Notes: generated by a model from the letters alone, not told the origin. A stretch of 64,000 nt of DNA from Hamiltosporidium tvaerminnensis FI-OER-3-3 (GCA_022605425.2 CM061246.1:1-64000), one strand, 5' to 3'; shown: positions 1-64,000, counted from the first letter of the stretch. A program made the numbers and translations.

Positions 1-846
1 CCCTAACCCTAACCCTAACCCTAACCCTAACCCTAACCCTAACCCTAACCTCTAACCCTAACCCTAACCCTAACCCTAACCCTAACCCTAACCCTAACCC
101 TAACCCTAACCCTAACCCTAACCCTAACCCTAACCCTAACCCTAACCCTAACCCTAACCCTAACCCTAACCCTAACCCTAACCCTAACCCTAACCCTAAC
201 CCTAACCCTAACCCTAACCCTAACCCTAACCCTAACCCTAACCCTAACCCTAACCCTAACCCTAACCCTAACCCTAACCCTAACCCTAACCCTAACCCTA
301 ACCCTAACCCTAACCCTAACCCTAACCCTAACCCTAACCCTAACCCTAACCCTAACCCTAACCCTAACCCTAACCCTAACCCTAACCCTAACCCTAACCC
401 TAACCCTAACCCTAACCCTAACCCTAACCCTAACCCTAACCCTAACCCTAACCCTAACCCTAACCCTAACCCTAACCCTAACCCTAACCCTAACCCTAAC
501 CCTAACCCTAACCCTAACCCTAACCCTAACCCTAACCCTAACCCTAACCCTAACCCTAACCCTAACCCTAACCCTAACCCTAACCCTAACCCTAACCCTA
601 ACCCTAACCCTAACCCTAACCCTAACCCTAACCCTAACCCTAACCCTAACCCTAACCCTAACCCTAACCCTAACCCTAACCCTAACCCTAACCCTAACCC
701 TAACCCTAACCCTAACCCTAACCCTAACCCTAACCCTAACCCTAACCCTAACCCTAACCCTAACCCTAACCCTAACCCTAACCCTAACCCTAACCCTAAC
801 CCTAACCCTAACCCTAACCCTAACCCTAACCCTAACCCTAACCCTA
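1..846 (-). repeat. Telomeric repeat array (TTAGGG)n, about 140 units; chromosome left end
   Basis: Uninterrupted CCCTAA repeats from base 1 to 846 with one variant unit CCTCTAA at 49-55. The C-rich strand at the 5' end of the + strand is the orientation expected at a true terminus. Confidence 0.99.
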
Positions 847-899
847 TTTTTTAAGTTTAACTATAATATGTTGGCTTTTAATTAAAGAAAAATATATTT

Positions 900-6096: not shown

Positions 6097-6418
6097 ACAT
6101 GTCGGTGCGCACAAATGAGACAATGCCGCCGTATACATATGGATGATGCACTTTACATCGATGAGTAGAAAAGAAGCAGACCTTGGTCCCCCACTGACTA
6201 AATGGTAAATTATGGAGGCACTAACAGCTTTTATTAAATTTATTGATAGGATTATCTTATGCTAAAGTACTAGCCCACAAAGCGCGTTCGAAATATACCG
6301 AGTCATACCGAAGTGGAGGGAGTAGATGTAGTTCTTTCGCGGGTGCTATGTTTATGGAGTTCTGGTATGTTTAGAAAACTTCAATCTTTTTAAATAAAAT
6401 TATCTATATCCAAACCCT
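6097..6418 (+). mobile_element. GC-richer island ending in the LINE 3'-terminal module; probable solo 3' stub of the APE-LINE family
   Basis: TTCTGG-TATGT-TTAGAA hairpin (6360-6376), TTTAAATAAAATT (6389-6401) and CCAAACCCT (6410-6418) have the same order and similar spacing as 62377-62435 and 63298-63354. Confidence 0.55.
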
Positions 6419-8699: not shown

Positions 8700-11300
8700 A
8701 CTAGGATTTAGCGTCGGTTTCGAATCCAAAAAAGATTTTGCAGGTATATGTACGCTGCAAATTAATTAATATGGAAAGTTCCGAAGGATCGAAAGCTTTT
8801 GACGAAATAGAAAAACAAAGAATAAAATTGGTGATCTGGAATGGAATCAAAGGTTTTCCTATCCAAAACTAGAAAGGTGATAATTGATGAAACCCAAACT
8901 ATTATGTACATAATAAGCTTCTTTAGAATGAGCAATAAAAGTACGGGAAAAAACCCAAATCATCTTCGCACTTATTGCAGCAATTGTAGAAGATTATTTA
9001 GCAGAGAAAAGCGAAAAATATTTGCAAGGTGTTACTTAAGAGAAAAAAAGAGCCAGTAAAAGTAACAGACCCAGAAATCACTAAAAAGACAGTGGGAAAA
9101 GCTGTATAAATAATAAAGGCACCCAAAATCTATGAGAAGAATTAGGTACGGATATAATCGAAAGTAGTTACACGAGGGTGCGATCGCACAAGTTTTAACT
9201 AGGAATCTTTTTTTCAAATCAATAAATATATTTTTATATACTTTAGGGTATTAGACGGAATAGAACATTGATATATAGCCTATCTTTCAGATCCATTGAT
9301 TAATAAATTAAAATATGTGATAAATTAAGATTTTCTGAGATAAAAAATATTCGAGCCTATATAAATAATAAATTTAAAAATGATGTATTGATATTTTTAA
9401 AAGACTACCCGCGCACCTATTAAGAGAGAGTCCTGGATCAGATAATAGAAGAAACCTTATTTGCTAAACTTAAAGGAAGAATGGAAAACATTTTTAAACG
9501 AAATAAAAAAAATATAAATAAAAAGTTAAAAAAATTGAAGTGAGATTATTTAATTTTCAAGGGTAGAACTTGTGAGTTTCTGGAAAACGCTAATATAAGA
9601 ATTAGAAATATTAGATCGGGTCAAAAAATATTAATAAAATTACTTTTCACAATATTGGTCGTATTTCTAATATACAAATTTAAAAAAAATAATTTAATTA
9701 TTCAGTGTAAATAATTTTGGCATAGTAGCATCTGCTGGAAAGTGGCGCTACACGTTAGAAAATTAAAATCCAGATTATATGGTAATTGCCTGTAAGATAT
9801 CTAAAAAAAAATAATAAAACACGGTTTCTAATTCCGAGGAAATGTTGGTGTTATCGGATAAATTAATTTAATAGTATAATTAAAGATTTGACTAAATTCG
9901 GTGTTTGTATCAAGGTACAAAAATATATTTAATTTTCATTTACAAATCACGTTTAAATAATGCATTACATTTACTTAAGGCTAAAATAAGAAAATTTGCT
10001 GATATGAAGATATTAAGCTAGGAGGCTACAATCTGGAGAATGCAGTAACATTCGAATAATTTGTTCCCGACAAGCATTCGGAGTTGGGATTATATGAAAC
10101 AAAATTTGAGTCTTCTTTTTTTAAGCTCGAGAATAATGTTCTACCCTAGCATATGTACTTTTCAAAATTTAAGGTACGACCGGAACTTCATAAAATTAAA
10201 ATTTTTATTACAAACTGATAAATGTGTTTTTGAATAAAGCTAATTTTACATTAAATTCTATGTTTAATATCAATTAATTAAAAGATAAGACGCTAAAAAA
10301 ACCTTTAAGCAATAAAATTTAAGTTTTAACTTCTAGAAATGAATTCTGTTGAATAAATTACCGAATAAAGAAAAACTCGAATTATTGCAAGATATTTAAA
10401 TTGAAGCTTCGAGGAGTTTGCAAATAAAAAGACAAGTTTCTCATAAACTGCACAACCTTATCATAGCTAATTTAAAAAGAAATTGAACGAGCTGTGAGAA
10501 CGATAACTGACTTTAATTTTAAAGAAATTTAAGAGTTGATCAAAAAAATGAAAGGAAGATTAGTTATTTAGATAAAGCCAATTCTAATATTAGAATTCAA
10601 ATCTTGTTAACGATTTGGTTTCTAAAGTTGTTCCATGTAGTAAGAACGGAATGCGTGTGTTTGTAAATATATACGAAGCTTTTGGTTCAGTAGTGAGTAA
10701 CAATAATTCAGTATTCTGTTGACACTATATAAAGATAAAGTTAAAAAATTAATGACAGTCTTAATTATCAAAGCGATAAAGAAGATAGTTTAGTTAGTAT
10801 AATCTTATGTTAAATTTGAAAAGGGAAATAAAGCCACTACGGCCAATTAGTCTGGGTGATTTTAGAGAGAAAAAATGCACTTGAATAAACATGTTCATAG
10901 ATATATTTCGTTCATTTAAATAATTATTTTAATTCTTTTATTTTTTTGCGAGAAGTACCAAAGGCGTATAACTAAATACAATGACAGCAATAAAAAAGAG
11001 AAATAAATTATACGGAATCTCGCACTAATGAAAAAACTTGTAAATTGTTTGAAAAGAGCATATTTACGAAATTCGGGTTCGTTTTATAAAAGAAAAAAAC
11101 CAGTTACACACGGAATAACATAACCTTTACCAATAGCCTCCAGATAGAACATATTTTAGAAAGTAGTAGTGATATTTTCCGTAACGATCAATATGAAATC
11201 AGCTATGAAACGATCAAAAAAGAAGTTTGTAAAAGAACCTTATCTTGTATCAAGAGTTTATTCCGATGGATACTCTATTAATTGCAGAATTACTTTAGAA
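8700..11300 (+). mobile_element. Heavily decayed Ty3/gypsy LTR-retrotransposon relic; the integrase is best preserved
   Basis: Remnants in the expected order: LNEL*E (~10483, resembling ELWEID), AFGSVVSNNNSVF (~10678, SDNG-like), KAYN (10961), KKFVKEPYLVSRVYSDG (~11220-11270, GPY/F-like). No LTRs recognised. Confidence 0.45.
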
Positions 11301-11989
11301 TAAAAAATATTTATTGATAGAGTATAATCGAAAAAGAGAATGTACTACTTTTTGCAAAGAGTTACCACAAAGAACTGGGATATTCTTAAGTTTGTTCAAT
11401 ATTGTCCTTTATTATTTGATTTTCTATATCTCTTCTCATCTGAGGAATAATATATTTAGCTATGCAGAAGATCTTTTGCTTTATAGCAGTAGTTTGAAAC
11501 AGAGTAAGAAGAATATCAGATGCATTCAAAGCCCTTCATCTAATAATGCATATATTTTGAAAGCAAAGAACTACTCTTATAATTGCTGAAATGTGATTAA
11601 AATATATATTAATAATATTAGTGTTGAAAACCAATACCTTTTCAAGTATCTTAGATATTTCTTTTGTTTAAAAGGCGTTGATACGAATTTTACTGTCAGA
11701 CAACCAAGAAAAAAGGCTTTAAAAGCTGCAATTGTATTAATAAATATCTTCTGAGAAAAAAGGCGAAAATAACAGCAAAGTCTTCTAAAGTCGTGTTGAG
11801 AGGCTATGGTGGGCATGTTAGACTTATATTTGATTATCGATTGTTAATTTTCTAGGCTTATAACACGTTTTTCTTGGCAACGGAGTGAATTAAAAAAAAA
11901 GGTTGAAGTACTGTTTGAGGATATTTTATAATACACCCAGTATTTTTCCATATGCTCTACTACTATAGAAACAACTTAGCAAAGGTCAG

Positions 11990-14855: not shown

Positions 14856-14869
14856 TATACCCAATAATC

Positions 14870-29800: not shown

Positions 29801-32710
29801 CCAAAAATACATCTCATTAAACTTTTACTGTTTATATAAATGTCTACTAAAAAATCTATTTGTTTCTTTTCAATTTTTATTGCCTATTTAACAAACTTGC
29901 TTGATATATTTTGTATATGTTTTTTTAAAGAGCACCGAATTATGAAAAAATCTAGATGTAAAAATACACAATTAAACACCGAATAAAGCTCCGATTAATA
30001 TAAAAATACGATCGGCAAGCAAATTTTTACGCTTTATGATAATCGTAAGTCATTTTGAAGAATTTTTTGAGTATCAATTTTTTTGGATTTTTTAAGGCAT
30101 ATATACCTATAGTATCTCAAGATTTGTAAATTAACAAAACTACAACGAAAAAAAATTTAAGTTATGCAACAAAATCTAATTAATCTATCGAGTTGTCTTA
30201 AAATAAGCCAAGAAGTCCGTTTGGAATAAACTTCGATGTTCTGAAAGTAAATTTCTAAATTTCTTTTAGCAAATTTGTCATGAATGCATAGTATATTGTG
30301 TATGAAGTAATTTTAAAGAAGAAAACAATTTATTTAAAATATTTCCGGATTTGTATTTCTAAAACATCGCAAATATGATATATCAGTATATTATAAGTAG
30401 ATAGTATCCTTATCATATAATTTACATTATATTTTTTATAAATTCGTATCAGTATATTTTTTCATACATGTTTTATTTGTTCTGCATATAGTAGTATGAA
30501 TATATGAAAAATATAATTCGAAAATGCATATGTTCTTGCTGATAATTAGAAGGAATATAGCTGAGACCAAGGAATAATTTTTCCCATAGTTAAAAATAAA
30601 ATCTAGTAATTTTTATTAGGTTTTCATATTGCTTGATTTTTTTTATTAGGCTTAATGAAGTTACATCTAGCAGTATTAATGATTTTGAATTTCTAAAATA
30701 CAGTTTACAAAAGAAATACTATTTAATTATTTAAAAAAGTAAGAATAATACGAATATTTTTTAAAAAAATTGACTGTTGTGTTTGTTATAAAATTTGATA
30801 AAGTTTATGCTTATCTTAATTACCTGTTTTTTTGATTTTTTTCTTTCTATATTTGTATATGGTATATAAAACGAATCGAGAATTATCAAAAAATATTATG
30901 GCAAAGTATATGTTCAAATAGTTAAAAACAACTAAAAATGCAAGAAAACATCTCTTTAAGAAACAAATAGTTGTGTTTTTAATAAAATTTTACAATCTTT
31001 CAAGATATTATTTTATACATTTTTTTGCATTTTGTTAACCTATTTTGTATATAATGTGTAAGCCTTTCAAAATTTTTCAAAAATATTTAAGAGATAACTG
31101 ATTAAAAACCTGAAAATTCCTTTGAATATAACAAAATATTTTGTCATAAGTCAATAACTGTGTTTTAAATAAAATTTCTAGATGATTTTTATAATTTTCT
31201 GTGATCATAAATTCTCCAATACGGTCGATATAGTTACATATAGTCGTATTGAAATATTAATATTTGAAAAAAAAATTTAAAAATCATATGCATGAAAATC
31301 TGATAAATTATACAAAAAGACCAATAATTATCAAATCTAGTTTTTTTTCAAATTAGGTTTTTCTGAACTTTACTACTCTTCGTTTTTGAACCTTATTAGA
31401 TATGTTTTGTATATAGAATCTGAAAAGATTGAAAAATAGAAAAAAAAAATGAAATTAAGTAGTATACGAATTTTTTCTTATCGACTTATACAGATGTTAC
31501 AAATGGTTTTATATCAACCTATTAAATTTCTTTTAAATTTAAATTTTGTTTTTTATATGAATTTTATCTTTCTTTGACAGGTTTTGGGATATTGAGTGAC
31601 ACTATGATTATTATTCAAAAATATATTCGAAAAAACCTACATTTTAATATCTATAAATTATAGAAGACATATAAGAGATGTCTAATTAATTGTATTTTAC
31701 AGGATGCAATCTTTTTTTCTGATCTTGCTTCGAAGTTTTTTGATATATTCTTTTTAATTTTCAGCATGTAATGTTTAATCAAAAAACATATTAAGAATTA
31801 TAGAAAAATTTATTAACAAGATATAAGATTAACTCGTTAAAAATTCTTGCAAATAGTTGGATAAGTTTAAATAAATAATGTTTGTTTTTTTATGATTTAA
31901 TCTCGACGAATATTTCGAAATTTGCAATGCGTAAATTTTTAGTTTTAAGTAGAAGGTTTTAATATAGTGATATGATCGATTCCAAAATCAAAAGAAGGCT
32001 TATTAAAATGTATATGTTTTAACAAAAAAATCGATCAAAATACAACTGATTTTCATTATATAATACATTTCAATGTTATTATAACATTTCTGGTATTTAG
32101 GGTTTATTTTTGGTACCTGATTGGTTTTTATTAGTGTCATATATTCGTATTAAAGATTTTAACAATTAAAAAAATGTATATATAAATGTATGAAGGTTAA
32201 GATTTCATAGTTGCTCTAAAAATAACTAAAAGACTTTTAACACTCTACGATCATGTTTAAAGAAATTTAGAGATTTGATTCAAACTTCTTTTGAAGTATT
32301 TTTCTATTTAGTTAAAAATCACTATAAATTTTATCCCACATATATATTTTTTTTACTTGTATATCTCTTAATGACATTTTTATTTTACCTAAATTATTTC
32401 TCTATTTGTTATTTTAGACACTTATAATTTTATTTAATCAGAGATATTGAGTTATCACATTTTTAATAAGTTATTATGTTACCTAAAATATATTTACGAA
32501 GTTATTTTTCCTTTTTCATTTTTTATTACGTTATTTCACATTTAAAAACCAATCTTGGGTTTAGAAAGTTGTTATATATATGTTTTGTTCAGTCATTTAT
32601 AAGTTGTTATAAACTATACGTTCGGATTAACACGCTTTTTATTCATTTAAATATTCTATAAGTTCTTTTTTCTAAGATTAAAATTCTATTAATATATGCC
32701 TTTTATTTAT

Positions 32711-33979
32711 ATGGGTAGAAAGAAAAATGTTAGCAGCGAAATATCGAATAATACCAAAATAAAGGCTGCAAACGACGCTGATGAGGTGAAAAAGAGTGAT
32801 AGTGAGATACAAAAATGTAAGCTACACCCACCGGCGATTCCCCTACCTTCCTCCTCCTACACAACAATAACACCTCCACCACCAAGCCAAACATGCAGTA
32901 AAATGCAAAATAGTGGGCTTGACACCTTACCTTCGCCTAATGCACCAGTTCCCTCTTCGGTTGAAGTCTCTGCGTGCGAGCCATCGTACGACATGACAAG
33001 CCCCTGTACTCTAGCTATTCCGGAAGGTAACAGGCTAATGGCATTGCGGACGATATTCGATTCCGTAACAGCCGACCCGAAGGAATGGCCTCGAATTGTT
33101 TTTTTTGCAGTACAGACAAGGTTTGAAAGAATGCCAAGAAATGGCTGGACAGAGCTTCACAGGTACTATAATGAGAAATTCGGCTGCACTGAAACTCTCG
33201 AAGTGTTAAAAAAATTGGCACAAAGTGAGATGGGAAAGGATGTAAAATCAGAAGAGAATGGAGAGCGACGTAGAATCGCCACTTGTCTCGCTGATACATG
33301 CACCTTGACCGACACCACGGAGTACATAAACCTGAGAGATAAATTCTTGAGTAAAATCAAAGAAATCTCTGAGAACGAAATTGGAAAAGTGGTGGTCCGA
33401 ACTAGAAAACATCCAAATGAATTGGTTGATAGTAAAGTTCTGGATCTCATAAATCGAGTAGTCGGTGAATATGCAGGAGCTCATGTACCTGAGTCAATTA
33501 CGGAAGCCGCGTATATCATGCAAGCTGCGCAGGTATGCTATGACGAGGCAACACGTAAAGAGAAGCCTAGATCCGCTTGGAAGGAAAACATAGAAAGTAA
33601 AATTTCTAAGTTAGTACTTTCCAAAGATCTCCTCGAGAAAGCTCGTAAGCAGGAAAAGCTCTCCACTTCGGAAACGAAGAGCCTTAAGAAAATCATGCGA
33701 GAGTTTAATTTAAACTTGAGCAGCGTAACTGATCTTTCTGAGGCTTTAGTTAAGAAGAATGAGTCTTTGAATGTTTACGAGAAAAAAATTACGATGCATG
33801 AAAGTAGGAAGCAATTCCGAAAAGAGAATCGTATGTTTGAGCTTTTCCGAGGTCGATTTTATCGTGGGTTATCCGAGCGTGTGGAATCCGAGCATGTGGT
33901 TAGCCGTGATGAAATTATGAGTTTTTGGTCTACAATGTGGAACAAAATGATGACACAGTCACGTACGATGATTATTTGA
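32711..33979 (+). CDS. N-terminal part of the single RLE-element ORF (Pro/Ser-rich linker and basic region), frameshifted near 33945
   Basis: Open for over 400 codons, reaching EIMSFWSTMWN just before the RT domain-0 remnant (LPNWK.AGIDGI at ~34050). The ATG at 32696 lies in the host flank/TSD, so 32711 is the likely start. No N-terminal zinc finger, which fits the R4 clade. Confidence 0.8.
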   Translation: MGRKKNVSSEISNNTKIKAANDADEVKKSDSEIQKCKLHPPAIPLPSSSYTTITPPPPSQTCSKMQNSGLDTLPSPNAPVPSSVEVSACEPSYDMTSPCTLAIPEGNRLMALRTIFDSVTADPKEWPRIVFFAVQTRFERMPRNGWTELHRYYNEKFGCTETLEVLKKLAQSEMGKDVKSEENGERRRIATCLADTCTLTDTTEYINLRDKFLSKIKEISENEIGKVVVRTRKHPNELVDSKVLDLINRVVGEYAGAHVPESITEAAYIMQAAQVCYDEATRKEKPRSAWKENIESKISKLVLSKDLLEKARKQEKLSTSETKSLKKIMREFNLNLSSVTDLSEALVKKNESLNVYEKKITMHESRKQFRKENRMFELFRGRFYRGLSERVESEHVVSRDEIMSFWSTMWNKMMTQSRTMII

Positions 33980-36599: not shown

Positions 36600-39570
36600 A
36601 TCAATAGTTTTTTGTAATATTTTTTACATACAATACAAAATATTATTTGATTCCGTAATTTTTAAGATCACTTATTTTTATATAACATAATTTGCACAAT
36701 ATTTAAATCCTTACTTTTGAAACATGGTTTTGATTTATCAATTCTGTTTTCTATTTATTTATTTTGGTTTTATAAACGCTATATAGTTTTAAGGTTGAAA
36801 TACACTATTTCAGGTTCCTTTTTAGGTTTAATTTGAAGTTTCTTGTATGTAATTATCTTTTATTTAAACCTTGGCTTCTAAATAAATAATTGTATTACAT
36901 CTATATTTTAATAAACATTTTTCTTCTTTAGATTTTTTTAATTGAATATTGTATTTTGTAATAATTTTACTTATTTTTACTAAATTTAGAATTTCTACTT
37001 ATATTTAATATGTTTTACTTCAAAATATTTTAATATACCGTTATCTATATTTTTAGATCATTCTTTTGTTATTCATCTACTAAGTTAAGTGGTCACTTAT
37101 GTAAGCAGTTTTTCTACTTATGAAAGAAGTCTAGTTATTTTAATCATAAAGTTATAGAATAAAGTAACATTTTATTTTCTAATAAACTATAATTTTATTC
37201 CTATTTAATGAATTTTTAAAAATTTTATATTCATCTATCTTATAATTCCTTTAATCATATCATTTTGTTACATTGGAATATGTACTGTAGTATTTTCTCT
37301 TCCTATATGATTTTAAGGGGTTAACCTTAATAAGCTTATAAAATTTACCATAATTAGAAGTTTTTGAGTGTAATATATTGTAGGTTTTTTTATGTTCATT
37401 CTTTTTATTCAGACTCTTAAAACCTTATCTCGATATCTAAAAACATGTTTTTGCAATATTGGTTATTATACCTTGTGTTCAGTCTAAATATGGGCGTATT
37501 AAATTTTGTGAAATTGTTCAGAAAAGCTCTCGGTATATTGTTAGAAACATCAATCATATATGGTATTTATGCGTAACTTTAGATTTCTACATAACCTCAA
37601 ATTACAGACTTTCCCTTAAATTGAGCAAAATGCCAGGCATTATTATAAATGTATTGTTTATGTTACTTAAAAAAACATAAATATATTTGAAATAAAGATG
37701 TACATGTTAAAAGGTATTTTAATATCATGTATAGAAGTTTTAATCGAATTTATCAGAAAATTAATACTTTTGTCTTTCTTGAAATAGATAATATTTTATG
37801 GATTTAAAAGAGATTAATTTATTATGTGTAATACAATCTATAGGCAGTAGATTTTAATATTTCATTCGTCTCAATATATTCATATAAATATAAATTTCAT
37901 TTCATAATATATAGCCAGAGTGAACAACTTAAATTTTTATAGTTATAAATGTATTAAATTGTTTTTAATTTTGTAAGGTCTTCTTATTAGAATTATATAC
38001 TATCTTACTGCAAAGATCTAAAGAATTAAATTTAAATGAATAGGATAGTATATTAAAATATCTCAAACTGGTAACCTTGTTCTTATTATACTATTTCTAT
38101 TCCAAAACCAGATTTCAATAACTGTTTTGAGATTAAGTAAATGATAATTTTAATGTGCTTAAATCATTTATCTATATAAAAGAAAATCGCTACAACTGAT
38201 TTTTAATTAATTTAGAATCTGTATTTTTTTGGTTTTCTTAGATCTTTAACTTTTTTATAAAGCAATGCGGATTAACAAAAAAAGTAATTCAATGAATAAA
38301 AAAACATATAGATAAAATTTTAATTTAGTATAAATATAGAATGAATCTTTAAAAGATATATTTCAGTATAAACCAAATTGATAACTATTTTTTTAATATG
38401 TATTTTGCTAATTAGATATAAATATAATAAAAGTCTTTACATAATGAGGAACTACTATACTAATTTGAATTGGGAGATATTGATAATAATTTGATATCTA
38501 AATATAACGTATGGAGATTAAATGAGAAGTTAAAAAACCATTTTTTTAATGAAATCAGTCGTGTATTGTAATTCAACAAATAAAATATCTATGATTTTGT
38601 TGTTTCGTTTAGAGATTATAATATCAAAATCTCGATTTGTCTCCTTAAATACAAAAGAAAGACAATTGAATGTTAAAAATTACTAAAAACTATAATTAGT
38701 GTCTGAGGCTAACTGTTGTGGCATCTTTTACAAGTTATTTATGAATATCTTAGCATGAAACCGAATACTTAATTTATTTCGAAGGATTGAGCTTAATGTA
38801 AAAGCCATATAAACATAGGCCACAATCAACTGATATATTTTATTAGAATATTTAAAGGTGAATTATTACTTCTTACGGTACCTAAGCTGATAATGATTAT
38901 CGAATAGGCATATGCAAGGTTATTTATATATGTTACTAGTATGATTCAAAGGGTAGTATCAAAAAAATCATCGAGCTTCTTTAAAGTCGGATTTAACCAA
39001 ACAAGTGAATGAATTTACTTAGAATATATTTCTAGACAACCCAAAATATAATTAAATTTAATTACAACTACAATAAGCCCAAAGCAAAGAGCCCAATTAT
39101 AGAAGCAACTGCTAATTTGAAAGGACTCGGTATGAAGATGTATACATAAAGAAAATTATGAAATAATTTACTGAAATTACGACGAAAAAGTTTAAAAACT
39201 AATAACTTTTTTTTAATTAAATCAAATACGTTATTCTTGTCATTTATCTTGACCTGCTCCCTATTAACGTAAAAAAACACATTTTTTATTTCTGATATAT
39301 GAGTCAGGTTTAGGCTCTAGGATTAAGTTGATTTCTTTTTAAATAAATATTTTTTCTAACCTAATTTCATAAAAATTGCAATAATTTGTTTATTTTATTT
39401 CTTTCGAACAAAAAAGAAATTCGAAATCTACTAAACACTAGAAACTGTACCTTTACAAAATCTTTATTACCAATATCAAACATTTTCTTACAAAACCTCT
39501 TAATTTCATTTTAATGTGACTATAAAATAAAAAACCTTTTTAACCAAATTTTTTTATGATTTAGAACGAT
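36600..39570 (-). pseudogene. Family A paralog 4
   Basis: Minus frame NILHSKTSNYGKFYKLIKVNPLKSYRKRK (~37295-37380). ORF 39068-39280 is a surviving fragment. Closest to paralog 5 in the 37050-37950 region. Both ends approximate. Confidence 0.8.
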
Positions 39571-55449: not shown

Positions 55450-58220
55450 ACTTCAAAATAAATATTTATTTTTTATATGTAATTTTAAATTTAACTATCT
55501 TTGTGTTTGTTTTCCTTTTCATAAAAATATATTTCTTAGCTAAGTCTTTATTTCAGATACATAGTTCAAATTTATTAGTTAGTTTTTTATACTAACCCTT
55601 ATACTGTATAAATAATATAGTCTTTTCATCGATATAAACCATTTCTGGTTCGTTTTTATGTTTAATTTGAATTTAATATAATTTATATGTGATAAATTTT
55701 TAATCTGTCTCTAATATAAAAATTTGCATCATATTTTGACTTTTATTTACCTTTTTTTCATCTTTAAGCTTTTTAGTTGAATTTTTTAATTTATTATTAT
55801 TTTTAGTTAAATTTTCTAACTACAGAATGGTTCTTATATTTAGTTTGTTTTTTTTTCAAATTTCATTTGTTTATATCTTTTTACTTCTTATAATTCAAAG
55901 TTTTTTATTCGAATCCACATTTCTTTTGATTGCTTAAATTTATTTTCGGATTATTCCTTTGTTACTCATTTACTAAGCTAAATTGGTTACTTATGCAAGC
56001 AGTTTTTCTACTCATAAAACAAATCTAGTTCTTTTAATCTTAAAGTTATAGAATAAAGAACCATTTTATTTTCTAATAATCTATAATTTTATCTTGTTTT
56101 ACTCAAATGCTTTTATTTTATAGTCATTTATCTTAAAATATATAAATTCATTTCAATATGTTATATTTAAAAATATAATTAAGTATTTTCTCTTCTTATA
56201 TGATTTTAAGGGGTTAACCTTAATAAGCTTATAAAATTTACTAAAATTGGAAGTTTTTGAGTGTAAGGTATTGAATGTTTTTTTTGTGTTTTTAGAATAT
56301 TTGGACTATTAAAACCTTATATCAGTATCTTAAAATAAGATTTTCTTATCTTGGTCATAGTACGTTGTGTTTAACTTTAATATGGCCGTATTAAATTTTA
56401 TGAAATCGTTTGGAAAAGCTCTCGGTATATTGTTAGAAACATTAATCATATATGGTATTTATGCGTAACTTTAGATTTCTATATAACTTGATATCATCAT
56501 CCTTTCCTTAAATTGAGCAAAATACCAGTCATCTATTATAAATGTATTGTTTATGTTAGTTAAAAAAACATAAATATATTTGAAGGAAAGATGTACATTT
56601 GAAAAGGTATTTTTATCATGTATAGAACATTTCAATGAATTAATGAGAAAAGTATACTTATTCCTCTCTTTAAATGGATTTATTTTTATAGATTTATAAG
56701 ACATTTATTTATTATTCATATGTAATACAATCCATAGGCAGTAGATTTTAACATTTAATTCTTCTCATTATATCCATATAAATAAATATTTCATTTCAGA
56801 ATATATAGCAAGAGCGAACTAAATTGAATTTTTATAGAATAAATGTATTAAATGTTTTAATTTTATAAAGTCTTTTTATTAAATCTATATACTATCATCT
56901 TAGTGCTTAGTTCGAAAGTATTGAATAAAAATAAATAGTACACTTAGAAAAACCTCTTGAAGTGATAACCTTATTTTACTTATATTACTTTCAATTGTAA
57001 CTCACATTTCAATAACTGTTTATGCATTAATTATTTGTTAATTTCAATGCGCCTGATTTATCTACCTAGGTTAATGACGATGGCTATAACTATTTTTTAA
57101 AAGGTATGTATATCTATATTATTTTGGTTTTCTTAGATTTTTCACTTTCTTTGAAGCAATACGAATTAAAATAATTTGAATAATATTTTAATTCTGATAT
57201 AAAGACAGAATAAATTGTTAATATATAGTTCAGTAAAAACCATTATAATATAACTCATTTTATAATATATATTTTGACAATTAATATAAAGCTCGAGCAA
57301 ATCTTCAAAAAATAAAGAAATGCCTATATTGGTGTGAATTAAAAGAAATGATTACATTTTGATATCTAAATATATTATAGATAGATATTAAGGTAGAAAA
57401 TTAAAAAAATAGTCTTATAATTTAATGAAACAAGTATTTGCAACTCATCAAATAAAATTTCTATGCTAGTATCTTTTGATTTATAAATTATCATATAGAA
57501 CTTATATCTGTCTAATAAAAATAAAAAAAGAAAGACAAATGGATATAAAAAATTAAATAAAGTGTGAATAGGGTTAAAGGTTAAGGCATCAGCTACGAGT
57601 GAGTTAAGACCATCTTAGTATGAAACTTCTGATTCTCCTTTATATAAATAAAAAATAAATGTATAGTAAGGCAATATAAACAAAAGTCACCATCAACATA
57701 TACATTTACTGAAAAAATCGCAACTGAATATATTTTTATCTTACACAACCTATGCTAATTTGTATTATAAAAGTACATATGTAAGAATAGTTACACGTGT
57801 CGATACTATGAACCAAAGGGTAGTGTCAAAAAACCCATCCGATCTTGATTAAAACCGGATCTACCTAAATAAGTGAATAAATTCAGTTAAAATATATTAA
57901 TAGAAAGTTATACCAATATCTTAATTAAAATACAAGAACTCTAGGATAAAGAGCCCAAATATGGGATGCAAATGCCTATTTTAAATGACTCAAGGTGAAG
58001 ATATATATCATGAAGATAAAATAATTTACTGTGATTAAAACTAAACCTTTAAAAAACCAATAACTTTTATTTATTTTTGCTGACAAAACGTTATTTTTAT
58101 CAATTATCTTGATCAATTTCTTTTAAACGTGTAAAGAACCTATCTATCCTTTATGATATATAAGTGAGGCGTAGGCTCTTAGTTAAATTGCTTTCTTTTT
58201 GAATAATTGTGTTTTTCATG
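55450..58220 (-). pseudogene. Family A paralog 5
   Basis: Minus frames FNTLHSKTSNFSKFYKLIKVNPLKSYKKRK (~56186-56275) and IPYMINVSNNIPRAFPNDFIKFNTAILKLNTTYYDQ (~56350-56458). Colinear with paralog 1 right up to the telomere junction. Confidence 0.8.
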
Positions 58221-59048
58221 TTGAAACAAATGCTACTGTAACATTCGGGAAGGCCTTTATCTTAACATAATTGATCGGTCAATCCTTAAAGAGGCAGAAA
58301 AATCTATTGTTAATTGTTGATGATCCAATAACACTCTCTATATCTCGCACGAAGCCAAAGGGAACTTTAAAATAAGAAAAACAAGAGAAGTAATGAATAA
58401 TAGGAACAAACTTAAGGTTAAGATTAAAACGCTTATGGAAAGAATAATACGGTACCGGAAGACACATAGTAACCATCAAGAAATAAACACAAGAAATAAT
58501 AACTAAAGATAACAAAAATGAAAGAAAACAAAGGAATAAAGAAGAGAGGCCAATCATTTTGAATAGTGAGCAAATAAAGCAGATAATAATCGGAAAGTTT
58601 CTCTTTAAATAATAGCAGATACATATTTCTCTGGTTTACAAATATTTTTACCAATACTGTGAAATTTTATAAATTGGCAGTGGACAGCCTAGAACCTGGC
58701 ACATCTAAGCATATCATTAACATAGACTTCATTAACATTAACACTGCCGAGGTGATATACCAAGAAGAAAAAAATGTAATCATAAGAACCTTAACGAAGC
58801 TGCCTGCCAAAGAAATGATGAACTCCCCAGAAGTAAATCAGAGCGGAGTATCTAATGCGTATAATTTCAAGAACAGATGCGCAAGATTAAAAACTGATCT
58901 AGAAATAACAATAATCGTCTTATTAAATTGGTGATTAAACTGATACAATGTCGGGTAAGAGACTTTCTGGGTATGTTAGAAATGCTTGAAATTCGGTCCA
59001 AATAAGTTAAGGAAGAAAATTCATCCGAAATCAACTAAAATATAACAT

Positions 59049-61910
59049 ATGGATTTTAAATTAGGTTATATTAACCTAGAAGGCTTATCAACAATTAAAA
59101 TTACTAAAACTCATAGCTTACTACGATTAAAAAAGCTAGATATCTTAGGTGTTATAGAGACATGGCATGATGAAATAAATTTTCTGGATGCAACCAAAAG
59201 ATTCTGGCAAAAAAGCAATCAATAAGAGTAGACAAAAGGTATTCTAACAAAAGAGAAATAATAGTTATAACGCGGAAAACATTAAGAGAGGTGATTGAAG
59301 AGATTACGGATTTTGGAATTTCAATAAAATACGATAACAATCTACTTGTTTTGATTTAGTGAAACCTTTCTAGCAATGATCGTAATATATTAAAACCTGC
59401 AATACATGAGTTCACAAATCAAAAAATAATAATACTTGGAGATTATAACCTCGAGCAAACTCGTGAATTGGAAGACAAAGTTTTGAATAATCATATGAAC
59501 TATGGTCTATACGAATTATATCTCTATGCAAACACATACAAACATCAGAACAAAATATCTTCACCTGATAAAATTTTTTCTAACACCCCAATAAGAACTG
59601 ATGGTATAGAAATTATAACAATAAACCATAAATTGATAATAGCAGAGACCTTTGAATTGTCTACTTCAGCTATTCCCGGGTATAAAATAAATCTAATAAA
59701 AGATAACAAAATAAGAAGTAAAATAACAAAGAGAATTGAAAAACTTGTTACAAAAAATAAAGTTATATTGCAAAACCTAAATATTGAGGAGAGATGTAAC
59801 TTCCCACACCATATATTACTGAATGCCACGAGAATAATTCGGATCGTAAATAAGAAAACAAAAAGAGGTAATCCAATAATTCAACACACAAGACAACAAC
59901 GAGAAGCCACAGAAACATACACACTGAAACTTATAAGAAACTACGCTCTGACGTTAAAAAATTAAGAAGAAACTTTTTGAGGAAGAAATGCCCTTGCGTA
60001 ACTTAAAACATGTTGGTTTAGAAGCATGCGAAGTGGAAAAAATAATAAATCTCCACGGAAAGGCTCAACCGAGAACAAATCTTTACCCTAAAGACTTGAT
60101 AGACAAATTTGTTCTAGATGGAAGGTACAATAAAGTAGAAAACACAATACAGGAAATTGAAGATTACTACAGTAAAAAGATTTAAAAAGGAGAATTTCGT
60201 GAAAACAACATAACAGAGATCACGCTAGAAGAAGTTCTTAATAATATTAAAAGTCTTAAATTAGGCAAATCGGAGGAATATCGGGTATAAGGAATGAATT
60301 TCTTTAAATATGCCCTAAAAACTTTGTTTCCGAACTTACAGATTTATTCAATAAGATTTTAGTAGATCAATGAATTCCATCGTCATGGAAATTTCATCGA
60401 ATACAACCGGTACCGAAAGGAAACGAAAACTTCAGGCCCATCGCTTATTGAAGAAACAAAAAAACTTTTGAAAAAATCATTTTAAGCAAATTTGATGTAC
60501 ATCTTCATAAGCAACAGGCTGGTTTTAAGACAGGACATTCATCACTTAACCCCGCGCTTGCACTCGACACACTCTTAAGACATAGCAACGGCAATATGAT
60601 AAATGTAACACTCTACATTAAGAAAGCTTATGATTCAGTTGACAGAAATAAACTTTACTGGAAACTAATAAAACTGCAAAAATTTTCTATCAGAGACACA
60701 AAACTTATAGCTCACCTTATAGAGAATAACAAATACACTCTGTGCTCAAACAAAGCCACATCATTAGTAAAGACTGCATCAATAGGACCACCAAAGGGTA
60801 GCATTATTTCACCAAAATTGTTTAATATATTTATTGATGATATAATTCACTTTATACAGAAAAGATTTAGACATATGGTATTCCTATATGCTGACGATAT
60901 TCTAATATGGCCCACCAACGGTCCAAATTGCCCAAAATATCATATTAGGAATGGAAAGGCACTCAACGATTAATAATTACAGATTCAATCCGGATAAATG
61001 TTACTACAATACAACAAAAGATATCAGTATCAAAGTATACAACACTAATTTTACAAAACAGAGCCCTTAAAATACTTATGTTTCTTTTTTATAAATAGAG
61101 GGGCAGGAGTGTCCAAATCGACCAAGATCATAAAACAGAAAGCTGTTAGGGCTGCGGTAATAATGAATAAAGTCATGACAAAGAGCATATTTTACAGAGA
61201 AGAAAATAAATACAGAATGAAACTAAAAGGATATACTACGTTTGTGAGACCATACATTGATTACTTTTCGCAACTATTAGGCTTTCAAAAAACCTTTCTT
61301 GATCAGAAAGATAGAATTTAGAAAGGTATAATAAAAACCTATTTAAGATTTACTATCGAACACCCTCAAAATTTACGCACTTTTTCCAATAGAAAATGCT
61401 TATCAAAGAGCAATGTGATTGAGGTACAATATCGCGTATAAACTAAAAAGAGCAAAAAACACAACTATTAGAAAACTATACTTTAGGTTTAACTCAAAGA
61501 ACCTGAAAACCCTGAAAAACAATTATGTCAGAGACCAGAAAATTTACAAAAATGAAAGCTTATAGACTAAATTCAAGAGAATTTTAAAAGAAAAATTAAG
61601 GTTAAACTTCAGAACATTTAGTTGGAGTAACACACTAAAAAAATACAATTTCCAAAAATGCACCTAAGATGAATTCTCACAGATTTTAAATGTTATACAA
61701 ACAGAATACAAAAGAAGAGATCTTGGTGATATTTTATTAAAATTTATCTTGATATACATAAGCCTCCCACATTATAATGAAACAAATGACTATGGCCTAG
61801 TTAACCTAAAACACACAAAAAAAAATCAAAAACAAAAGGCGGGGAGCCAGAAATGAACGATACCGCCATATTTAAATATTTGGCTAGATTTACACTGCGA
61901 GAAGAGATGA
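59049..61910 (+). pseudogene. ORF2 of element A (AP endonuclease + reverse transcriptase), multiply frameshifted
   Basis: ORF fragments 59468-59965, 59988-60185, 60596-60973 and 61109-61321 are pieces of one APE-RT frame. No RNase H or C-terminal CCHC recognised. Confidence 0.88.
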
Positions 61911-62376
61911 GGGACTATTAACGAGCGCGAGTTGGCCATTGGAGTTAGCCCCCCCCCCCCCAAAGACACAGTTGCATTAAAGGGGGTCTTATTGCATATA
62001 GGAGCGCGGATCATTAACACTCTTTATGTAAGGGCTACAACAGTAAGAGATAAGTCAATCCTAAAGGGGTGATACTTTTATTATAAACTAGCAGTGAGCA
62101 TAAAAGATGATGGGGACTGACGAGTAGATAAAGGATGTTGTTTTCTTGCCTATTTAGGATTATGTATGATGATCGTTAGGGAGTTTTAGATTGATTGAAT
62201 ATAGCCTGAGCCTAAAAGAAGTTAATTCCTGCAGGATAAAGTATGACAATAGGACCCCCTTGTTTGATATATAACATAGTCATCGGGTGGCCTTAAGGCT
62301 AGGAGAGTAGTTCAGTTAGTTTAAGACGTGTTAATAGAGACCCTAAAACTCTATAGTAAAGGTTAGGGTTAATCAT

Positions 62377-62435
62377 TTCTAGAACTTTCTAGAAACATAA
62401 AAATATTTAAATAAAATTTCTTTTTCCTAGCCTAA
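62377..62435 (+). other. Conserved LINE 3'-terminal module (hairpin or HSE-like palindrome, AATAAA, pyrimidine tract, telomere-like tail); second copy at 63298-63354
   Basis: TTCTAGAA-CT-TTCTAGAA versus TTCTGAAA-TT-TTTCAGAA; 22 identical nt TAAAAATATTTAAATAAAATTT; tails CCTAGCCTAA and CCTAACCCT. Confidence 0.75.
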
Positions 62436-63354
62436 TACGGTAATAATAACCTGCAATATTATCAATTAAGGTTAAGAATGTATACTAAATTTATACGCCC
62501 TCATATAGATTATTATACCAGCTGCTCGGTTGTAATAAAAAGTTTAATGAAGGCACTGATAGGATACAAAAAGGCATAATAAAATATCTATATAAAATTT
62601 ATTTCAAAACGCCAACGAAGATCTTATACGCATTATTTCGCTTGGAAAATACAAAGCAAATAGCGGATAGACTCAGGAGCAATGTTGCTTATATGATCAT
62701 ACACACAAGAAAAACACTTTAAGATGGATATTCAAAACGAATAAATCCAAAATATAAAAAATTTAAAGAAAAATTACAAGTATATCAAGAATATGGTTCA
62801 GGGAAATGAATTTAAAGCCAAATATAATAGATGGCAAAAAGAAAATTTGCGTCTTAATTCCCATATCTTTAACTCTTTCGAGAATCTAAGGCAGTACAAA
62901 TCCAAAAGGATTCCAACAACAATATTTAAAACTTTTTTAGATATTATTATTCCAGAACATAAAAGAGAAAATATAATTGAAATTTTAGTAAAATTTATTC
63001 AGCATAATATAGATCACCCTAACTTAGCGGGGTTTTTATTGGCCTTATTAATCCACAAGATACGAATTAGCAGGTACGTTAAGGCAGGATTCCCACAAGG
63101 GACGTTACTGCCATATTTAAAAATTTTTTACCAGATAATATTTTAAAGCTGATTAGGTTAAGAAGATGCCAATGAAACAAGACAATCTGGAACCTCAAGG
63201 AATTCCATATGAGGCTTCGTGAAAGTATAAGGGCAGATGAAACTGTAGTAACGGGTGTTATTAATGATACCAGGAGGAGGGGTTAATTGTGTGTAAATTC
63301 TGAAATTTTTCAGAACTTAAAAATATTTAAATAAAATTTTCTTTTCCTAACCCT
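62436..63354 (+). mobile_element. Element B: 5'-truncated, diverged relative of element A (ORF2 C-terminus and 3' UTR)
   Basis: RLRMYTKFIRPHIDYY..LLGCNKKFNEGTDRIQKGIIK aligns with A's KLKGYTTFVRPYIDYFSQLLGFQKTFLDQKDRI*KGIIK. The C-terminal KAG...T..PYL.I is shared, as is the terminal module. Confidence 0.85.
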
Positions 63355-64000
63355 TAAATTCCATTTCAGACAAAAACACCAAAAACAATAAAGAAAAACA
63401 AATGACAAACCAACAACTCGAAGAATAGTACACGAAAGAACAGTGACAGAAAACAAGACAAATTATTCAACGTGCGTTGGATGCAAGACTACATTAAAAA
63501 GCACAATCATACATCCTCAGAAGACGACAAAGACCGCAGATACAGGTATAGAGGGCCATAATAGGATCAGAATCATAAATAAGGAAACGGGGGGTAATAA
63601 CAAGGAAACAACAACAGATCTATCAGGTAATAGCCAGCCTGGTAATACAAGGATACCTTCTAAGGAACATAGTGAGACATAATCTGATCAGATAACATCT
63701 ACATGTAACTCAAGTTTGACAGCAGATCAAGAAAAAAAGTCGAAAATATCAAGGTCTCCAGAAACAATAAGGCTTTCATGGATATCAAAGCTGTCACCCC
63801 ATCCTTTTTTTCAAGACATATAAATAATACTCAAGAACACATTGTCTAAGACACGGGAGAAATAAATTTAAGCTTCTGATTAAGAATGAAAGCAGTGAAG
63901 ATGATAATACAGAAAAAAAGAGTAGGGCAATAAATGACAATAATGAAGAGGAAAAGAACAAGGTAGTGGAAGGAGATAAAAACATCCTAAACACCAAATG
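63355..64000 (+). mobile_element. Element C: probable ORF1-like 5' region of a third LINE, running out of the window
   Basis: Same strong A-rich + strand skew as element A. ATG at 63402, low-complexity hydrophilic peptide, and NKFKLL (~63861) resembling the NRFxxL motif of LINE ORF1s. No catalytic domain visible. Confidence 0.5.

What the first reader, a model, noticed from the sequence alone, without database searches (positions are those of the whole stretch)
58240..64000. Head-to-tail array of APE-RT LINEs ending in telomere-like tails: candidate telomere-primed retrotransposon system and fossil chromosome end
Seen: elements A and B and a probable third element C abut without spacers, all on the + strand with 5' ends toward the telomere. 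A and B have no poly(A) tail and end in CCTAGCCTAA (62426-62435) and CCTAACCCT (63346-63354), which resemble the C-strand of this chromosome's own telomere. B's ORF2 homology starts immediately after A's tail, so A's 3' end is fused to a 5'-truncated relative. No TSD is evident. Established: this polarity and tandem 5'-truncated layout characterise Drosophila HeT-A/TART, Giardia GilM/GilT and bdelloid Athena elements, and TRAS/SART are APE LINEs that target telomeric repeats. Inference: the RNA 3' end pairs with a TTAGGG 3' end to prime reverse transcription, and this array marks a former terminus now buried under 58 kb. I know of no such family described in microsporidia-like genomes. Caveats: the tails are only 1.5-2 units long and there is no telomeric remnant at A's 5' junction.
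Basis: partly seen in the sequence, partly recalled or inferred. Interest (0 to 1): 0.85.

Follow-up and report, generated by a model that had tools for sequence, protein, structure and literature searches.

The report
Telomere-tailed LINE array in microsporidian subtelomere
Three decayed jumping genes of the water-flea parasite Hamiltosporidium tvaerminnensis lie head to tail near a chromosome end, each ending in a few bases of the telomere repeat instead of poly(A); their family occurs only near chromosome ends and always points the same way, which suggests but does not prove that it copies itself onto chromosome tips.

Summary
The genome is H. tvaerminnensis and the window is the left end of contig C1.

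Layout:
- Element A (58223-62435), a 5'-truncated element B (62436-63354) and element C (63355 to C1:68689, beyond the window) abut without spacers on the + strand.
- A ends in CCTAGCCT(AA) and B in CCTAACCCT. Neither has poly(A). C's tail has decayed.

Family identity: intact relatives encode ORF1 plus a 916-aa ORF2 with a LINE-type APE endonuclease fold and an RT domain.

Support for telomere direction:
- 24 of 25 genomic clusters of this clade lie within 184 kb of a contig end with the 5' end toward it.
- An unrelated RT family in the same genome is dispersed on both strands.
- 13 of 15 distinct 3' junctions carry 4-15 nt of C-strand telomere repeat.
- Decay rises toward the centromere in three arrays.
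- The window's array sits at the border with single-copy DNA.

Limits:
- Priming on a G-strand end is inferred, not shown.
- A ≥12-kb block shared by five ends stops exactly at a B tail, so DNA-level copying also shapes these regions.
- A noncoding repeat shows the same polarity.
- No RNA data were obtainable.

Earlier follow-ups of this scan reported the same system on other pieces of this genome. I found no published description for microsporidia. I class it as a new variant of a known kind.

The parts
1..846 (+). Terminal telomere tract (CCCTAA)n of contig C1. It is context for the finding: it gives the C-strand sequence that the LINE tails resemble.
   Evidence: Sequence read. Repeat counts.
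55599..58222 (+). Copy of noncoding subtelomeric repeat R, directly upstream of A. This copy's own tail has decayed. Some other R copies end in a LINE-like 3' module (TTTAAATAAAT..TTTTTCTAACCT).
   Evidence: at least 48 matches, all near contig ends and all with the same polarity; no ORF of 120 aa or more in 12 copies; 3' ends.
58223..62435 (+). Element A, a decayed APE+RT LINE. ORF1 C-terminal remnant at 58614-58934, ORF2 remnant at 59049-61772, 3' UTR at 61773-62435.
   Evidence: 92% identical to C9:4542-8069; tblastn coordinates and stops. Pfam on the intact relative.
62426..62435 (+). A's 3' tail, CCTAGCCT(AA). It is a variant C-strand telomere motif. The last AA is shared with B's first bases.
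   Evidence: B homology starts at 62434.
62436..63354 (+). Element B, a 5'-truncated LINE. It holds only the last ~180 codons of ORF2 plus the 3' UTR.
   Evidence: 91% identical to the 3' 920 bp of longer copies; matches ORF2 residues ~728-908.
63346..63354 (+). B's 3' tail, CCTAACCCT, equal to 1.5 C-strand telomere units.
   Evidence: The same tail is seen at three other distinct junctions of the B family.
63355..64000 (+). 5' part of element C. The element continues to C1:68689 in locus L001. It is the most decayed of the three, and its 5' region (63355-64723) is single-copy in the genome.
   Evidence: the 5' region is unique.
62356..62425 (+). Conserved 3' module of A: a G-rich patch (GGTTAGGGTTA), a short hairpin (TTCTAGAA/TTCTAGAA), the box AAATATTTAAATAAAAT and a T-rich run before the tail.
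   Evidence: alignment of 16 3' ends, with 12 invariant columns in the box; fold of A with z = -2.9.
6339..6418 (+). Orphan decayed LINE 3' module ending in CCAAACCCT, with the same polarity, 6.4 kb from the telomere.
11218..11778 (+). Decayed RT fragment of the same broad clade, with the same polarity.

Best explanation
A, B and C are old, inactive copies of a Hamiltosporidium-specific clade of non-LTR retrotransposons.

Anatomy:
- Members encode ORF1 plus an APE-endonuclease/RT ORF2.
- The transcript does not end in poly(A). It ends in a conserved 3' module (hairpin, AAATATTTAAATAAAAT box, T-run) followed by about 1.5 units of the C-strand telomere repeat.

Proposed mechanism (inferred):
- The telomere-complementary RNA tail is positioned on G-strand telomeric DNA at a chromosome end whose telomere is nearly lost, or at the base of the tract.
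- The RT extends that DNA 3' end. The new copy then lies with its 5' end outward and its tail joined to whatever formed the old end, often an eroded, 5'-truncated older copy.
- Telomerase caps the new end.
- Repetition builds head-to-tail arrays that grow outward.
- The window's array is the innermost and oldest layer of the C1-left subtelomere.

Shown: domain content, tails, junction anatomy, distribution, polarity and the decay gradient.
Inferred: the priming step, the role of the endonuclease and the timing.
For: Identity of the genome:
- Close relatives are named only from H. tvaerminnensis and H. magnivora.
- Assembly size, contig number and N50 match PMC10542269.

Domains:
- RVT_1 hits at E about 1e-31.
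- The N-terminal 215 aa fold with pLDDT 93. Their best structural matches are human L1 EN, R1Bm EN and TRAS1 EN, with TM about 0.7.
- The catalytic N, E, Y, D-x-N, D and H columns are kept.

Distribution:
- 24 of 25 clusters lie within 184 kb of a contig end with the 5' end toward it.
- Every tblastn hit in about 200 kb of held subtelomeres has that polarity.
- As a control, the RLE-type RT family of window 951-3281 is dispersed on both strands throughout the chromosomes.

Tails:
- 13 of 15 distinct 3' junctions end in 4-15 nt of C-strand repeat.
- Tail length varies within families. Family X has CCCT(AA) on C9 and CCCTAACCCC on C5. Family A has 10 nt versus about 5 nt. One junction on C11 has CCCTAACCCTACCCT.

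Junctions: a tail is fused directly to a 5'-truncated relative in the window (A|B), on C9 (X|A) and on C11 (B|F1).

Terminal copy: on C9 the telomere tract sits directly on an ORF1-truncated copy with an intact ORF2.

Age gradient: stops per 100 codons rise inward in three arrays.
- C1L: 1.4 then 4.5.
- C11R: 0.1, 0, 0.8, 1.9.
- C7L: 0.2 then 3.1.

Position: DNA on the centromere side of C is single-copy.
Against: - No RNA evidence was obtained. The two RNA runs laid gave zero reads and are no test.
- Polarity is not specific to these LINEs. The noncoding repeat R and a 1.2-kb repeat have the same end-directed polarity, so exchange between subtelomeres could preserve orientation passively.
- A ≥12-kb block shared at 92-93% by C7L, C11R and C1R (and by C4L and C15R) stops exactly at a B tail. 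RNA-mediated addition cannot carry such a block.
- Most tails are a constant 9 nt in a fixed phase. That fits a tail encoded in the RNA and copied whatever the target was.
- The APE domain is conserved, although pure end-priming would not need it.
- Of 13 left ends inspected, only C9 has a member of this clade directly under the telomere.
- The C7L B|G junction is also present in H. magnivora, so the arrays are ancient and current activity is not shown.
- Most of the 58 kb on the telomere side of the array is not recognisable retroelement DNA.
Confidence: 0.58

Rival explanations
1. Endonuclease-dependent, sequence-specific insertion, in the manner of TRAS/SART or Tx1. The APE nicks telomere-type sequence, either the innermost repeats of the telomere tract or the telomere-like tail of a resident copy. 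The RNA tail anneals at the nick. Arrays would arise because each copy brings a new target.
For: - The APE fold and most catalytic residues are conserved in intact copies.
- The tail phase is constant.
- Junctions carry only 4-15 nt of repeat, as expected for a defined cut site.
- The architecture produced would be the same as observed.
Against: - No copy is embedded in any of the 13 terminal tracts inspected, and no junction keeps a long repeat run. TRAS/SART are flanked by repeats on both sides.
- Insertion at a resident's tail predicts that the inner element is the younger one. In three arrays the inner elements are the more decayed.
- The Asp of the SDH motif is Asn in most members.
Confidence: 0.25
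2. Ordinary LINEs that merely survive in gene-poor subtelomeres. Polarity and stacking would come from segmental duplication, break-induced replication and ectopic exchange between chromosome ends. The telomere-like tail would be an incidental part of a conserved 3' end that later serves as microhomology for DNA repair.
For: - A block of 12 kb or more ends exactly at a B tail in three different contexts.
- C1R, C15R and C4L share at least 19 kb, including the flank on the centromere side.
- Noncoding repeats share the polarity.
- The B|G junction is shared with H. magnivora.
Against: - A 9-nt telomere match at the exact terminus recurs in lineages that are only 27-50% identical in ORF2, and its length varies within families. 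CCTAACC is otherwise rare, at 3 occurrences in 63 kb.
- There are different 5' truncation points and different neighbours on both sides for families A, B and X.
- A second abundant RT family in the same genome is not confined to ends.
Confidence: 0.12
3. Chimeric cDNAs. During one integration event the RT jumps from an internal point of one LINE RNA to the 3' end of another. This would produce tail-to-truncated-relative junctions in a single event.
For: The junction geometry (a complete 3' end followed at once by a truncated relative, with 0-2 nt of microhomology) is what template switching gives.
Against: - Neighbours within an array differ strongly in decay. A has 1.4 stops per 100 codons and C has 4.5. 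On C11 the range is 0.1 to 1.9. They are therefore not of one age.
- It does not explain the confinement to chromosome ends or the polarity.
Confidence: 0.05

Closest known systems
Athena / Coprina endonuclease-deficient Penelope-like elements (bdelloid rotifers, fungi; Gladyshev & Arkhipova 2007, as cited in PMC10088271 and PMC8557442)
   Same: They are subtelomeric, sit with the 5' end outward, form 5'-truncated head-to-tail stacks under telomerase caps, and have short stretches of telomere repeat at the 3' ends and junctions. The proposed mechanism, pairing of the RNA 3' end with the G-overhang, is the one inferred here.
   Different: Those are Penelope-like RTs without an endonuclease. These are LINE RTs with a conserved APE domain and an ORF1.
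TRAS / SART of Bombyx and other insects (R1 clade)
   Same: They are APE+RT LINEs tied to the telomere repeat. TRAS1 EN is among the structural matches of the APE model.
   Different: TRAS/SART insert inside long telomeric arrays, are flanked by repeats on both sides and carry poly(A) (established knowledge; PMC10088271). Here junctions hold at most 15 nt of repeat, none of the 13 terminal tracts inspected holds a copy, and there is no poly(A).
HeT-A / TART / TAHRE of Drosophila
   Same: Head-to-tail, 5'-truncated terminal arrays with the 3' end toward the centromere.
   Different: Drosophila lacks telomerase, and its junctions are oligo(A). Here telomerase repeats cap every complete end, and the junctions are telomere-like.
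GilM/GilT (Giardia), Zepp (Chlorella), MoTeR (Pyricularia), Tx1-1_ACar (Anolis); from my own knowledge also Cnl1 of Cryptococcus
   Same: Retrotransposons concentrated at or in telomeres of telomerase-positive organisms, several of them in tandem 5'-truncated arrays (list in PMC10088271).
   Different: GilM/GilT and MoTeR are placed in the CRE clade in PMC10088271; that this clade carries a restriction-like rather than an APE endonuclease is from my own knowledge. Zepp stacks through poly(A). None of these is reported from Microsporidia, and none is an APE LINE with a fixed 1.5-unit telomere tail.
LINE repeats flanking telomeres in Microsporidia sp. MB (PMC13174016)
   Same: A microsporidian in which LINE repeats of up to 10 kb lie next to the telomeric repeats on most chromosomes.
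   Different: That report is descriptive only. It gives no tails, polarity, stacking or mechanism. Its telomere repeat is TTAG.

Membership tests
APE-type non-LTR retrotransposon (LINE) | Reverse transcriptase domain of the LINE type | tested here: met
   RVT_1 at E about 1e-31 in four intact relatives. A's remnant aligns to residues 4-916 of the intact C9 ORF2.
APE-type non-LTR retrotransposon (LINE) | N-terminal apurinic/apyrimidinic-like endonuclease | tested here: met
   Pfam Exo_endo_phos scores only 18-20 bits, below its cutoff, and a sequence search of the PDB is blank for this domain. The AlphaFold model has pLDDT 93, and its best matches are L1, R1Bm and TRAS1 endonucleases at TM about 0.7. 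Catalytic columns are kept, except that SDH reads INH in most members.
APE-type non-LTR retrotransposon (LINE) | Variable 5' truncation with a constant 3' end | tested here: met
   A starts at 58223 in the window and at the equivalent of 58904 on C9. B is 0.9 kb here and about 4.6 kb elsewhere. X is truncated in ORF1 at the C9 telomere.
APE-type non-LTR retrotransposon (LINE) | Target-site duplication | tested here: inconclusive
   Every 5' side examined is another element or the telomere, so no pair of flanks could be compared.
TRAS/SART-type telomeric-repeat-specific LINEs | Insertion inside telomeric repeat arrays, with repeats on both sides | tested here: not met
   Junction repeats are 4-15 nt. 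None of the 13 terminal tracts inspected is interrupted by a copy. There is no repeat at A's 5' junction.
TRAS/SART-type telomeric-repeat-specific LINEs | Poly(A) tail | tested here: not met
   No A-run is present at any of the 16 aligned 3' ends.
TRAS/SART-type telomeric-repeat-specific LINEs | R1-clade RT phylogeny | not tested
The nearest relatives outside the genus are unnamed APE+RT proteins at no more than 37% identity.
Drosophila HTT-type telomere-forming retrotransposons | Head-to-tail terminal arrays with the 5' end outward | tested here: met
Drosophila HTT-type telomere-forming retrotransposons | Elements replace telomerase repeats as the chromosome terminus | tested here: not met
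   Of the 17 contig ends inspected here (all left ends except C14, C16 and C17, which were also read, plus the right ends of C1 and C11), the 13 that reach a telomere carry (CCCTAA)n or (TTAGGG)n tracts.
EN-deficient Penelope-like elements (Athena/Coprina) | Penelope-like RT without an endonuclease | tested here: not met
   An APE domain is present. The architecture is ORF1 plus APE-RT.
EN-deficient Penelope-like elements (Athena/Coprina) | Short telomere-repeat stretches at 3' ends and junctions of subtelomeric stacks | tested here: met
   13 of 15 distinct junctions.

The most novel reading that the evidence does not exclude
This LINE clade, possibly with the noncoding repeat R as a passenger that shares its 3' module, builds the large polarised subtelomeres of Hamiltosporidium chromosomes. 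It would do so by reverse-transcribing onto ends whose telomere is almost gone, acting as a back-up to telomerase. The telomere-like tails it leaves inside the chromosome would later serve as seeds for break-induced replication or healing. That would explain multi-kb blocks that end exactly at a tail.
Probability: 0.25. Interest if true: 0.8.

Novelty: new variant of a known kind. Interest (0 to 1): 0.6.

Why it matters
Retrotransposons that work at chromosome ends are known from a handful of lineages (PMC10088271). They bear on how telomerase and retroelements are related and how each can stand in for the other.

An APE-bearing LINE that carries a telomere-complementary tail instead of poly(A) would add a fungus-related, intracellular-parasite lineage to that list. 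It lives beside an active telomerase in a microsporidian with unusually large subtelomeres. It would also combine features so far seen separately: the APE LINE body of TRAS/SART and the telomere-repeat 3' end and stacking of the endonuclease-less Penelope-like elements.

There is a practical use as well. It would explain much of the repeat structure at the ends of the H. tvaerminnensis assembly, and it gives simple sequence markers (the 3' box plus the tail) for annotating it.

Tried and rejected
- **'B is part of A or an internally deleted element'** was rejected. A's tail is the true end of an independent A copy on C9, which is followed by unrelated DNA. B aligns to the 3' end of longer copies that have their own ORF2 upstream.
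- **Chance resemblance of the tail** was rejected on its rarity and its recurrence.
- **Pattern search** was mis-specified (TTTCCYTA) and found only family X. It was corrected.
Several intact copies (C2, C3, C4:6456, C14, C16, C6) could therefore not be read, and their tails are unknown.
- **Sequence search of the PDB** gave RT hits only and no APE hit.
- **RNAalifold** predicted no consensus structure for the 3' module. Single-sequence folds show a hairpin in most lineages, but only A (z = -2.9) and B (z = -2.0) stand out from shuffles. The hairpin is therefore weakly supported.
- **RNA runs** X20 and X8 gave zero reads, so expression and the RNA 3' end remain untested. Short-read contigs break at the repeats and do not span A|B.
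- **RT clade assignment** was not possible without named reference sequences. The protein atlas returned only generic APE+RT clusters.
- **Element C's 5' boundary** could not be checked against relatives, because 63355-64723 is single-copy.

Full report
**What the window is**

The window begins with 846 bp of (CCCTAA)n. It is the left end of contig C1 of a 21,638,905-bp assembly in 17 contigs. Close relatives of the ORF2 studied here are named only from H. tvaerminnensis and H. magnivora.

**The observation**

The region 58-64 kb is richer in G+C (30-33% against about 22%) and strongly A-rich on the + strand (AT skew +0.21). Three elements abut.

- **Element A** runs from about 58223 to 62435.
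  - It has an ORF1 C-terminal remnant at 58614-58934 and an ORF2 remnant at 59049-61772.
  - It is 92% identical over 3.5 kb to C9:4542-8069, whose ORF2 is open for 916 codons.
- **Element B** (62436-63354) is 91% identical to the last 920 bp of longer copies on C4, C7, C11, C15 and the right end of C1.
  - In those copies the family's own ORF1 and ORF2 lie upstream.
  - B is therefore a separate element cut down to its last ~180 codons and its 3' UTR.
- **Element C** starts at 63355 and continues beyond the window to C1:68689.
  - Its ORF1 is at 64735-65157 and its ORF2 at 65159-67851, with about 37 stops.
- **Tails.** A ends in CCTAGCCT(AA) and B in CCTAACCCT. Neither has poly(A). The last AA of A's tail is also the first two bases of the B homology.
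- **Rarity of the motif.** CCTAACC occurs three times on the + strand in the 63 kb outside the telomere tract. One is B's last nine bases. Another (17684) lies about 30 nt beyond the detectable end of a partial copy of repeat R, so I only suspect it is that copy's tail.
- **Assembly support.** An independent short-read contig of 13.2 kb crosses the B|C junction. None crosses A|B.

**What the elements are**

Intact relatives carry RVT_1 (E about 1e-31) and a weak Exo_endo_phos match below Pfam's cutoff. A sequence search of the PDB found only RTs.

An 18-sequence alignment of the N-terminal 215 residues keeps the N, E, Y, G-D-x-N, D and H columns of the endonuclease family. The Asp of the usual S-D-H motif is Asn in most Hamiltosporidium members. 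The AlphaFold model (pLDDT 93.3, pTM 0.90) matches LINE endonucleases best. The top matches are human L1 EN, R1Bm EN and TRAS1 EN, with TM about 0.62-0.73.

ORF1 has no Pfam match, and only its C-terminal ~165 residues are conserved between lineages.

These are therefore ORF1 + APE-RT LINEs. Outside the genus the nearest proteins are unnamed APE+RT sequences at no more than 37% identity. I could not assign an RT clade.

**The 3' module**

I aligned sixteen 3' ends from lineages whose ORF2s are only 27-50% identical. They share these parts, in order:

- a G-rich patch;
- a short inverted repeat, TTCTAGAA/TTCTAGAA in A and TTCTGAA/TTCAGAA in B;
- the box AAATATTTAAATAAAAT, with 12 invariant columns;
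- a T-rich run;
- the tail.

RNAalifold gave no consensus structure. Single-sequence folds show the hairpin in most lineages, but only A (z = -2.9) and B (z = -2.0) beat shuffles.

Counting junctions with distinct flanks, 13 of 15 end in C-strand telomere sequence:

| Junction(s) | Tail |
|---|---|
| B on C1, C11 and the C15 group; F3 on C11 | CCTAACCCT |
| B on C7 | CCTAACC |
| F2 on C11 | CCTAACCCA |
| F1 on C11 | CCCTAACCCTACCCT |
| X on C9 | CCCT(AA) |
| X on C5 | CCCTAACCCC |
| A on C1 | CCTAGCCT(AA) |
| A on C9 | CCTA(C) |
| C13 copy | CCTAA(AC) |
| window 6418 | CCAAACCCT |

C and the 'D' module have AT-decayed ends. The tail is thus a family character. Its length varies within families.

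**Distribution**

A protein search of the whole genome gave 57 scored matches, which merge into 25 clusters.

- 24 clusters lie within 184 kb of a contig end with the 5' end toward that end. The exception is a distant 31%-identity hit in the interior of C1.
- All hits in about 200 kb of held subtelomeres have this polarity.
- Only 50 of 379 first-look candidates were scored, so this describes the clade's closest members.
- The control is informative. The RT element that abuts the telomere at 951-3281 belongs to a young family (97-100% identity) that is scattered along all chromosomes on both strands. From my own reading of its C-terminus it looks like an R4/Dong-like element with a restriction-like endonuclease. 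This is not tested.

**Junction anatomy elsewhere**

- On C9 the telomere tract sits directly on a copy of family X that is truncated within ORF1 but has an intact ORF2. X's tail is fused to a 5'-truncated A copy that also has an intact ORF2.
- On C11 four elements are stacked. The B tail is followed within a base by RT residue ~625 of the next element.
- In three arrays stop-codon density rises from the telomere side to the centromere side: 1.4 then 4.5 per 100 codons on C1L; 0.1, 0, 0.8 and 1.9 on C11R; 0.2 then 3.1 on C7L.
- The 5.3 kb on the centromere side of C is single-copy apart from a 135-bp dispersed repeat.
- No R copy or LINE of this clade was found further in on C1 among the matches that were scored; both searches scored only part of their first-look candidates.
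- The window's array is therefore the innermost layer of the subtelomeric repeat domain seen here.

**Complications**

- Polarity is not unique to the LINEs.
  - The noncoding repeat R has at least 48 copies, no ORF of 120 aa or more in 12 copies, and five copies in the window. A 1.2-kb repeat behaves the same way. Both are confined to ends and polarised.
  - Some R copies end in TTTAAATAAAT...TTTTTCTAACCT(AA), which resembles the LINE 3' module. R may be a passenger of the same machinery. This is not established.
- A block of at least 12 kb is shared at 92-93% by C7L:5787-17912, C11R:777-12871 and C1R:5691-17810, and also by C4L and C15R. It stops exactly at the B tail.
  - The flanks on the centromere side are three unrelated sequences.
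  - That is DNA-level copying. It could be break-induced replication primed from a nearly lost telomere on the interstitial telomere-like tail. It could instead be independent B insertions followed by homogenisation of everything on the telomere side of B.
- The C7L B|G junction is present in an H. magnivora contig (L061:4873). These arrays therefore predate the species split.
- Of 13 left ends inspected, only C9 has this clade directly under the telomere. No terminal tract is interrupted by a copy.
- Most of the window between 3.3 and 55.6 kb is low-copy, ORF-poor, AT-rich DNA without detectable retroelement homology.

**Mechanism**

The anatomy fits a model that grows outward. A new copy is attached at a chromosome end with its tail toward the old end. 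The end is then capped by telomerase. Erosion and repetition stack the elements.

The short junction repeats (15 nt at most) argue that attachment happens where very little telomere is left, or at the base of the tract. They argue against attachment on a full-length overhang and against insertion within a long tract as in TRAS/SART.

The pairing step itself is inferred. The mostly constant 9-nt tail in one phase is equally what one expects if the tail is encoded in the RNA and simply copied. The conserved APE leaves an endonuclease-dependent route open. The inward rise in decay argues against a model in which new copies insert at the tail of a resident, because that would make the inner element the younger one.

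My odds:

| Explanation | Odds |
|---|---|
| End-directed, tail-guided model | about 0.58 |
| Endonuclease-dependent site-specific variant | 0.25 |
| Passive accumulation plus DNA-level exchange | 0.12 |
| Template-switch chimeras | 0.05 |

**Comparison and novelty**

In behaviour the closest system is the endonuclease-less Penelope-like Athena/Coprina group: short telomere repeats at 3' ends, 5'-truncated subtelomeric stacks and telomerase caps. In protein content the elements are APE LINEs, like TRAS/SART. They fail the TRAS/SART features of insertion inside repeat arrays and of poly(A). They fail the Drosophila feature of replacing telomerase.

A review table of telomeric retrotransposons lists no microsporidian (PMC10088271). 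The two Hamiltosporidium genome papers do not describe such elements (PMC10542269, PMC12449221). A 2026 paper notes only that LINE repeats flank the TTAG telomeres of Microsporidia sp. MB (PMC13174016).

Earlier follow-ups of this scan reached the same reading on other pieces of this genome (s1-599448, s1-605084, s1-605112).

- the dispersed-family control;
- the decay gradient;
- the border position of this array;
- the block that ends at a tail;
- the shared junction in H. magnivora;
- the LINE-like end of repeat R.

**Limits**

- Several intact copies were not inspected.
- No RNA evidence was obtained.
- No RT phylogeny was made.

Noticed in passing
window 847-3281 (ORF 951-3281, +): A 5'-truncated RT element with an open 776-aa frame abuts the telomere tract directly. 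By eye it has a C-terminal zinc-knuckle and a PD-(D/E)xK-like motif, so it looks R4/Dong-like. Its family is young (97-100% identity) and dispersed on both strands across all chromosomes (58 matches scored of 2983 candidates). This end therefore looks like a break inside an ordinary dispersed element that telomerase healed.
   Followed up: partly
window 55599-58222, 37045-39362, 12643-14856, 3390-6062, 16475-17651: Noncoding repeat R is about 2.3-2.6 kb with copies roughly 70% identical. It has at least 48 copies genome-wide, all near contig ends and all in one polarity. Some copies end in TTTAAATAAAT..TTTTTCTAACCT(AA), like the LINE 3' module, so it may be a non-autonomous partner.
   Followed up: partly
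L017/L008/L014 (C7:5787-17912), C11:663702-675796, C1:1955420-1967539: A block of at least 12 kb is shared at 92-93% by five chromosome ends and stops exactly at the CCTAACC(CT) tail of a B-family LINE. The flanks on the centromere side are three unrelated sequences. On C11 the telomere is attached directly to the block's outer edge.
   Followed up: partly
L061:4845-4880 (H. magnivora contig PITI01000105.1): The sister species carries the same tail|next-element junction (..TTTTCCTAACC|GACACACAA..) as C7:17912 of this genome. It also has two head-to-tail ORF2s. The arrays are therefore older than the species split.
   Followed up: partly
L022:1-1200 (left end of C5): After only 13 and 7 perfect units, the telomere tract degenerates into hundreds of bases of variant repeats (CCTAGC, CCTGGC, CCTTCA). 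The CCTAGCC variant is the one seen in A's tail.
   Followed up: no
window 62361-62376: A's 3' UTR holds a G-strand telomere motif (GGTTAGGGTTA) about 60 nt upstream of its C-strand-like tail. The two pair in the predicted fold (z = -2.9). Other lineages have GGGGTGTTAAC at that place, which resembles the GGGTGTTA core of a minisatellite family noted elsewhere in this genome.
   Followed up: partly
window 32696-33979 (+): This is the only long ORF (427 aa) between 3.3 and 58 kb. It sits in an island of 34-40% G+C and has no Pfam match.
   Followed up: no
L001:4221-4573 (C1:68221-68573): A tandem duplication of about 180 bp (75% identical) lies inside element C's 3' UTR.
   Followed up: no
L001:5668-5804 (C1:69668-69804): A dispersed repeat of about 135 bp (72-81% identical) is found in chromosome interiors on both strands. 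It may be a small non-autonomous transposon.
   Followed up: no
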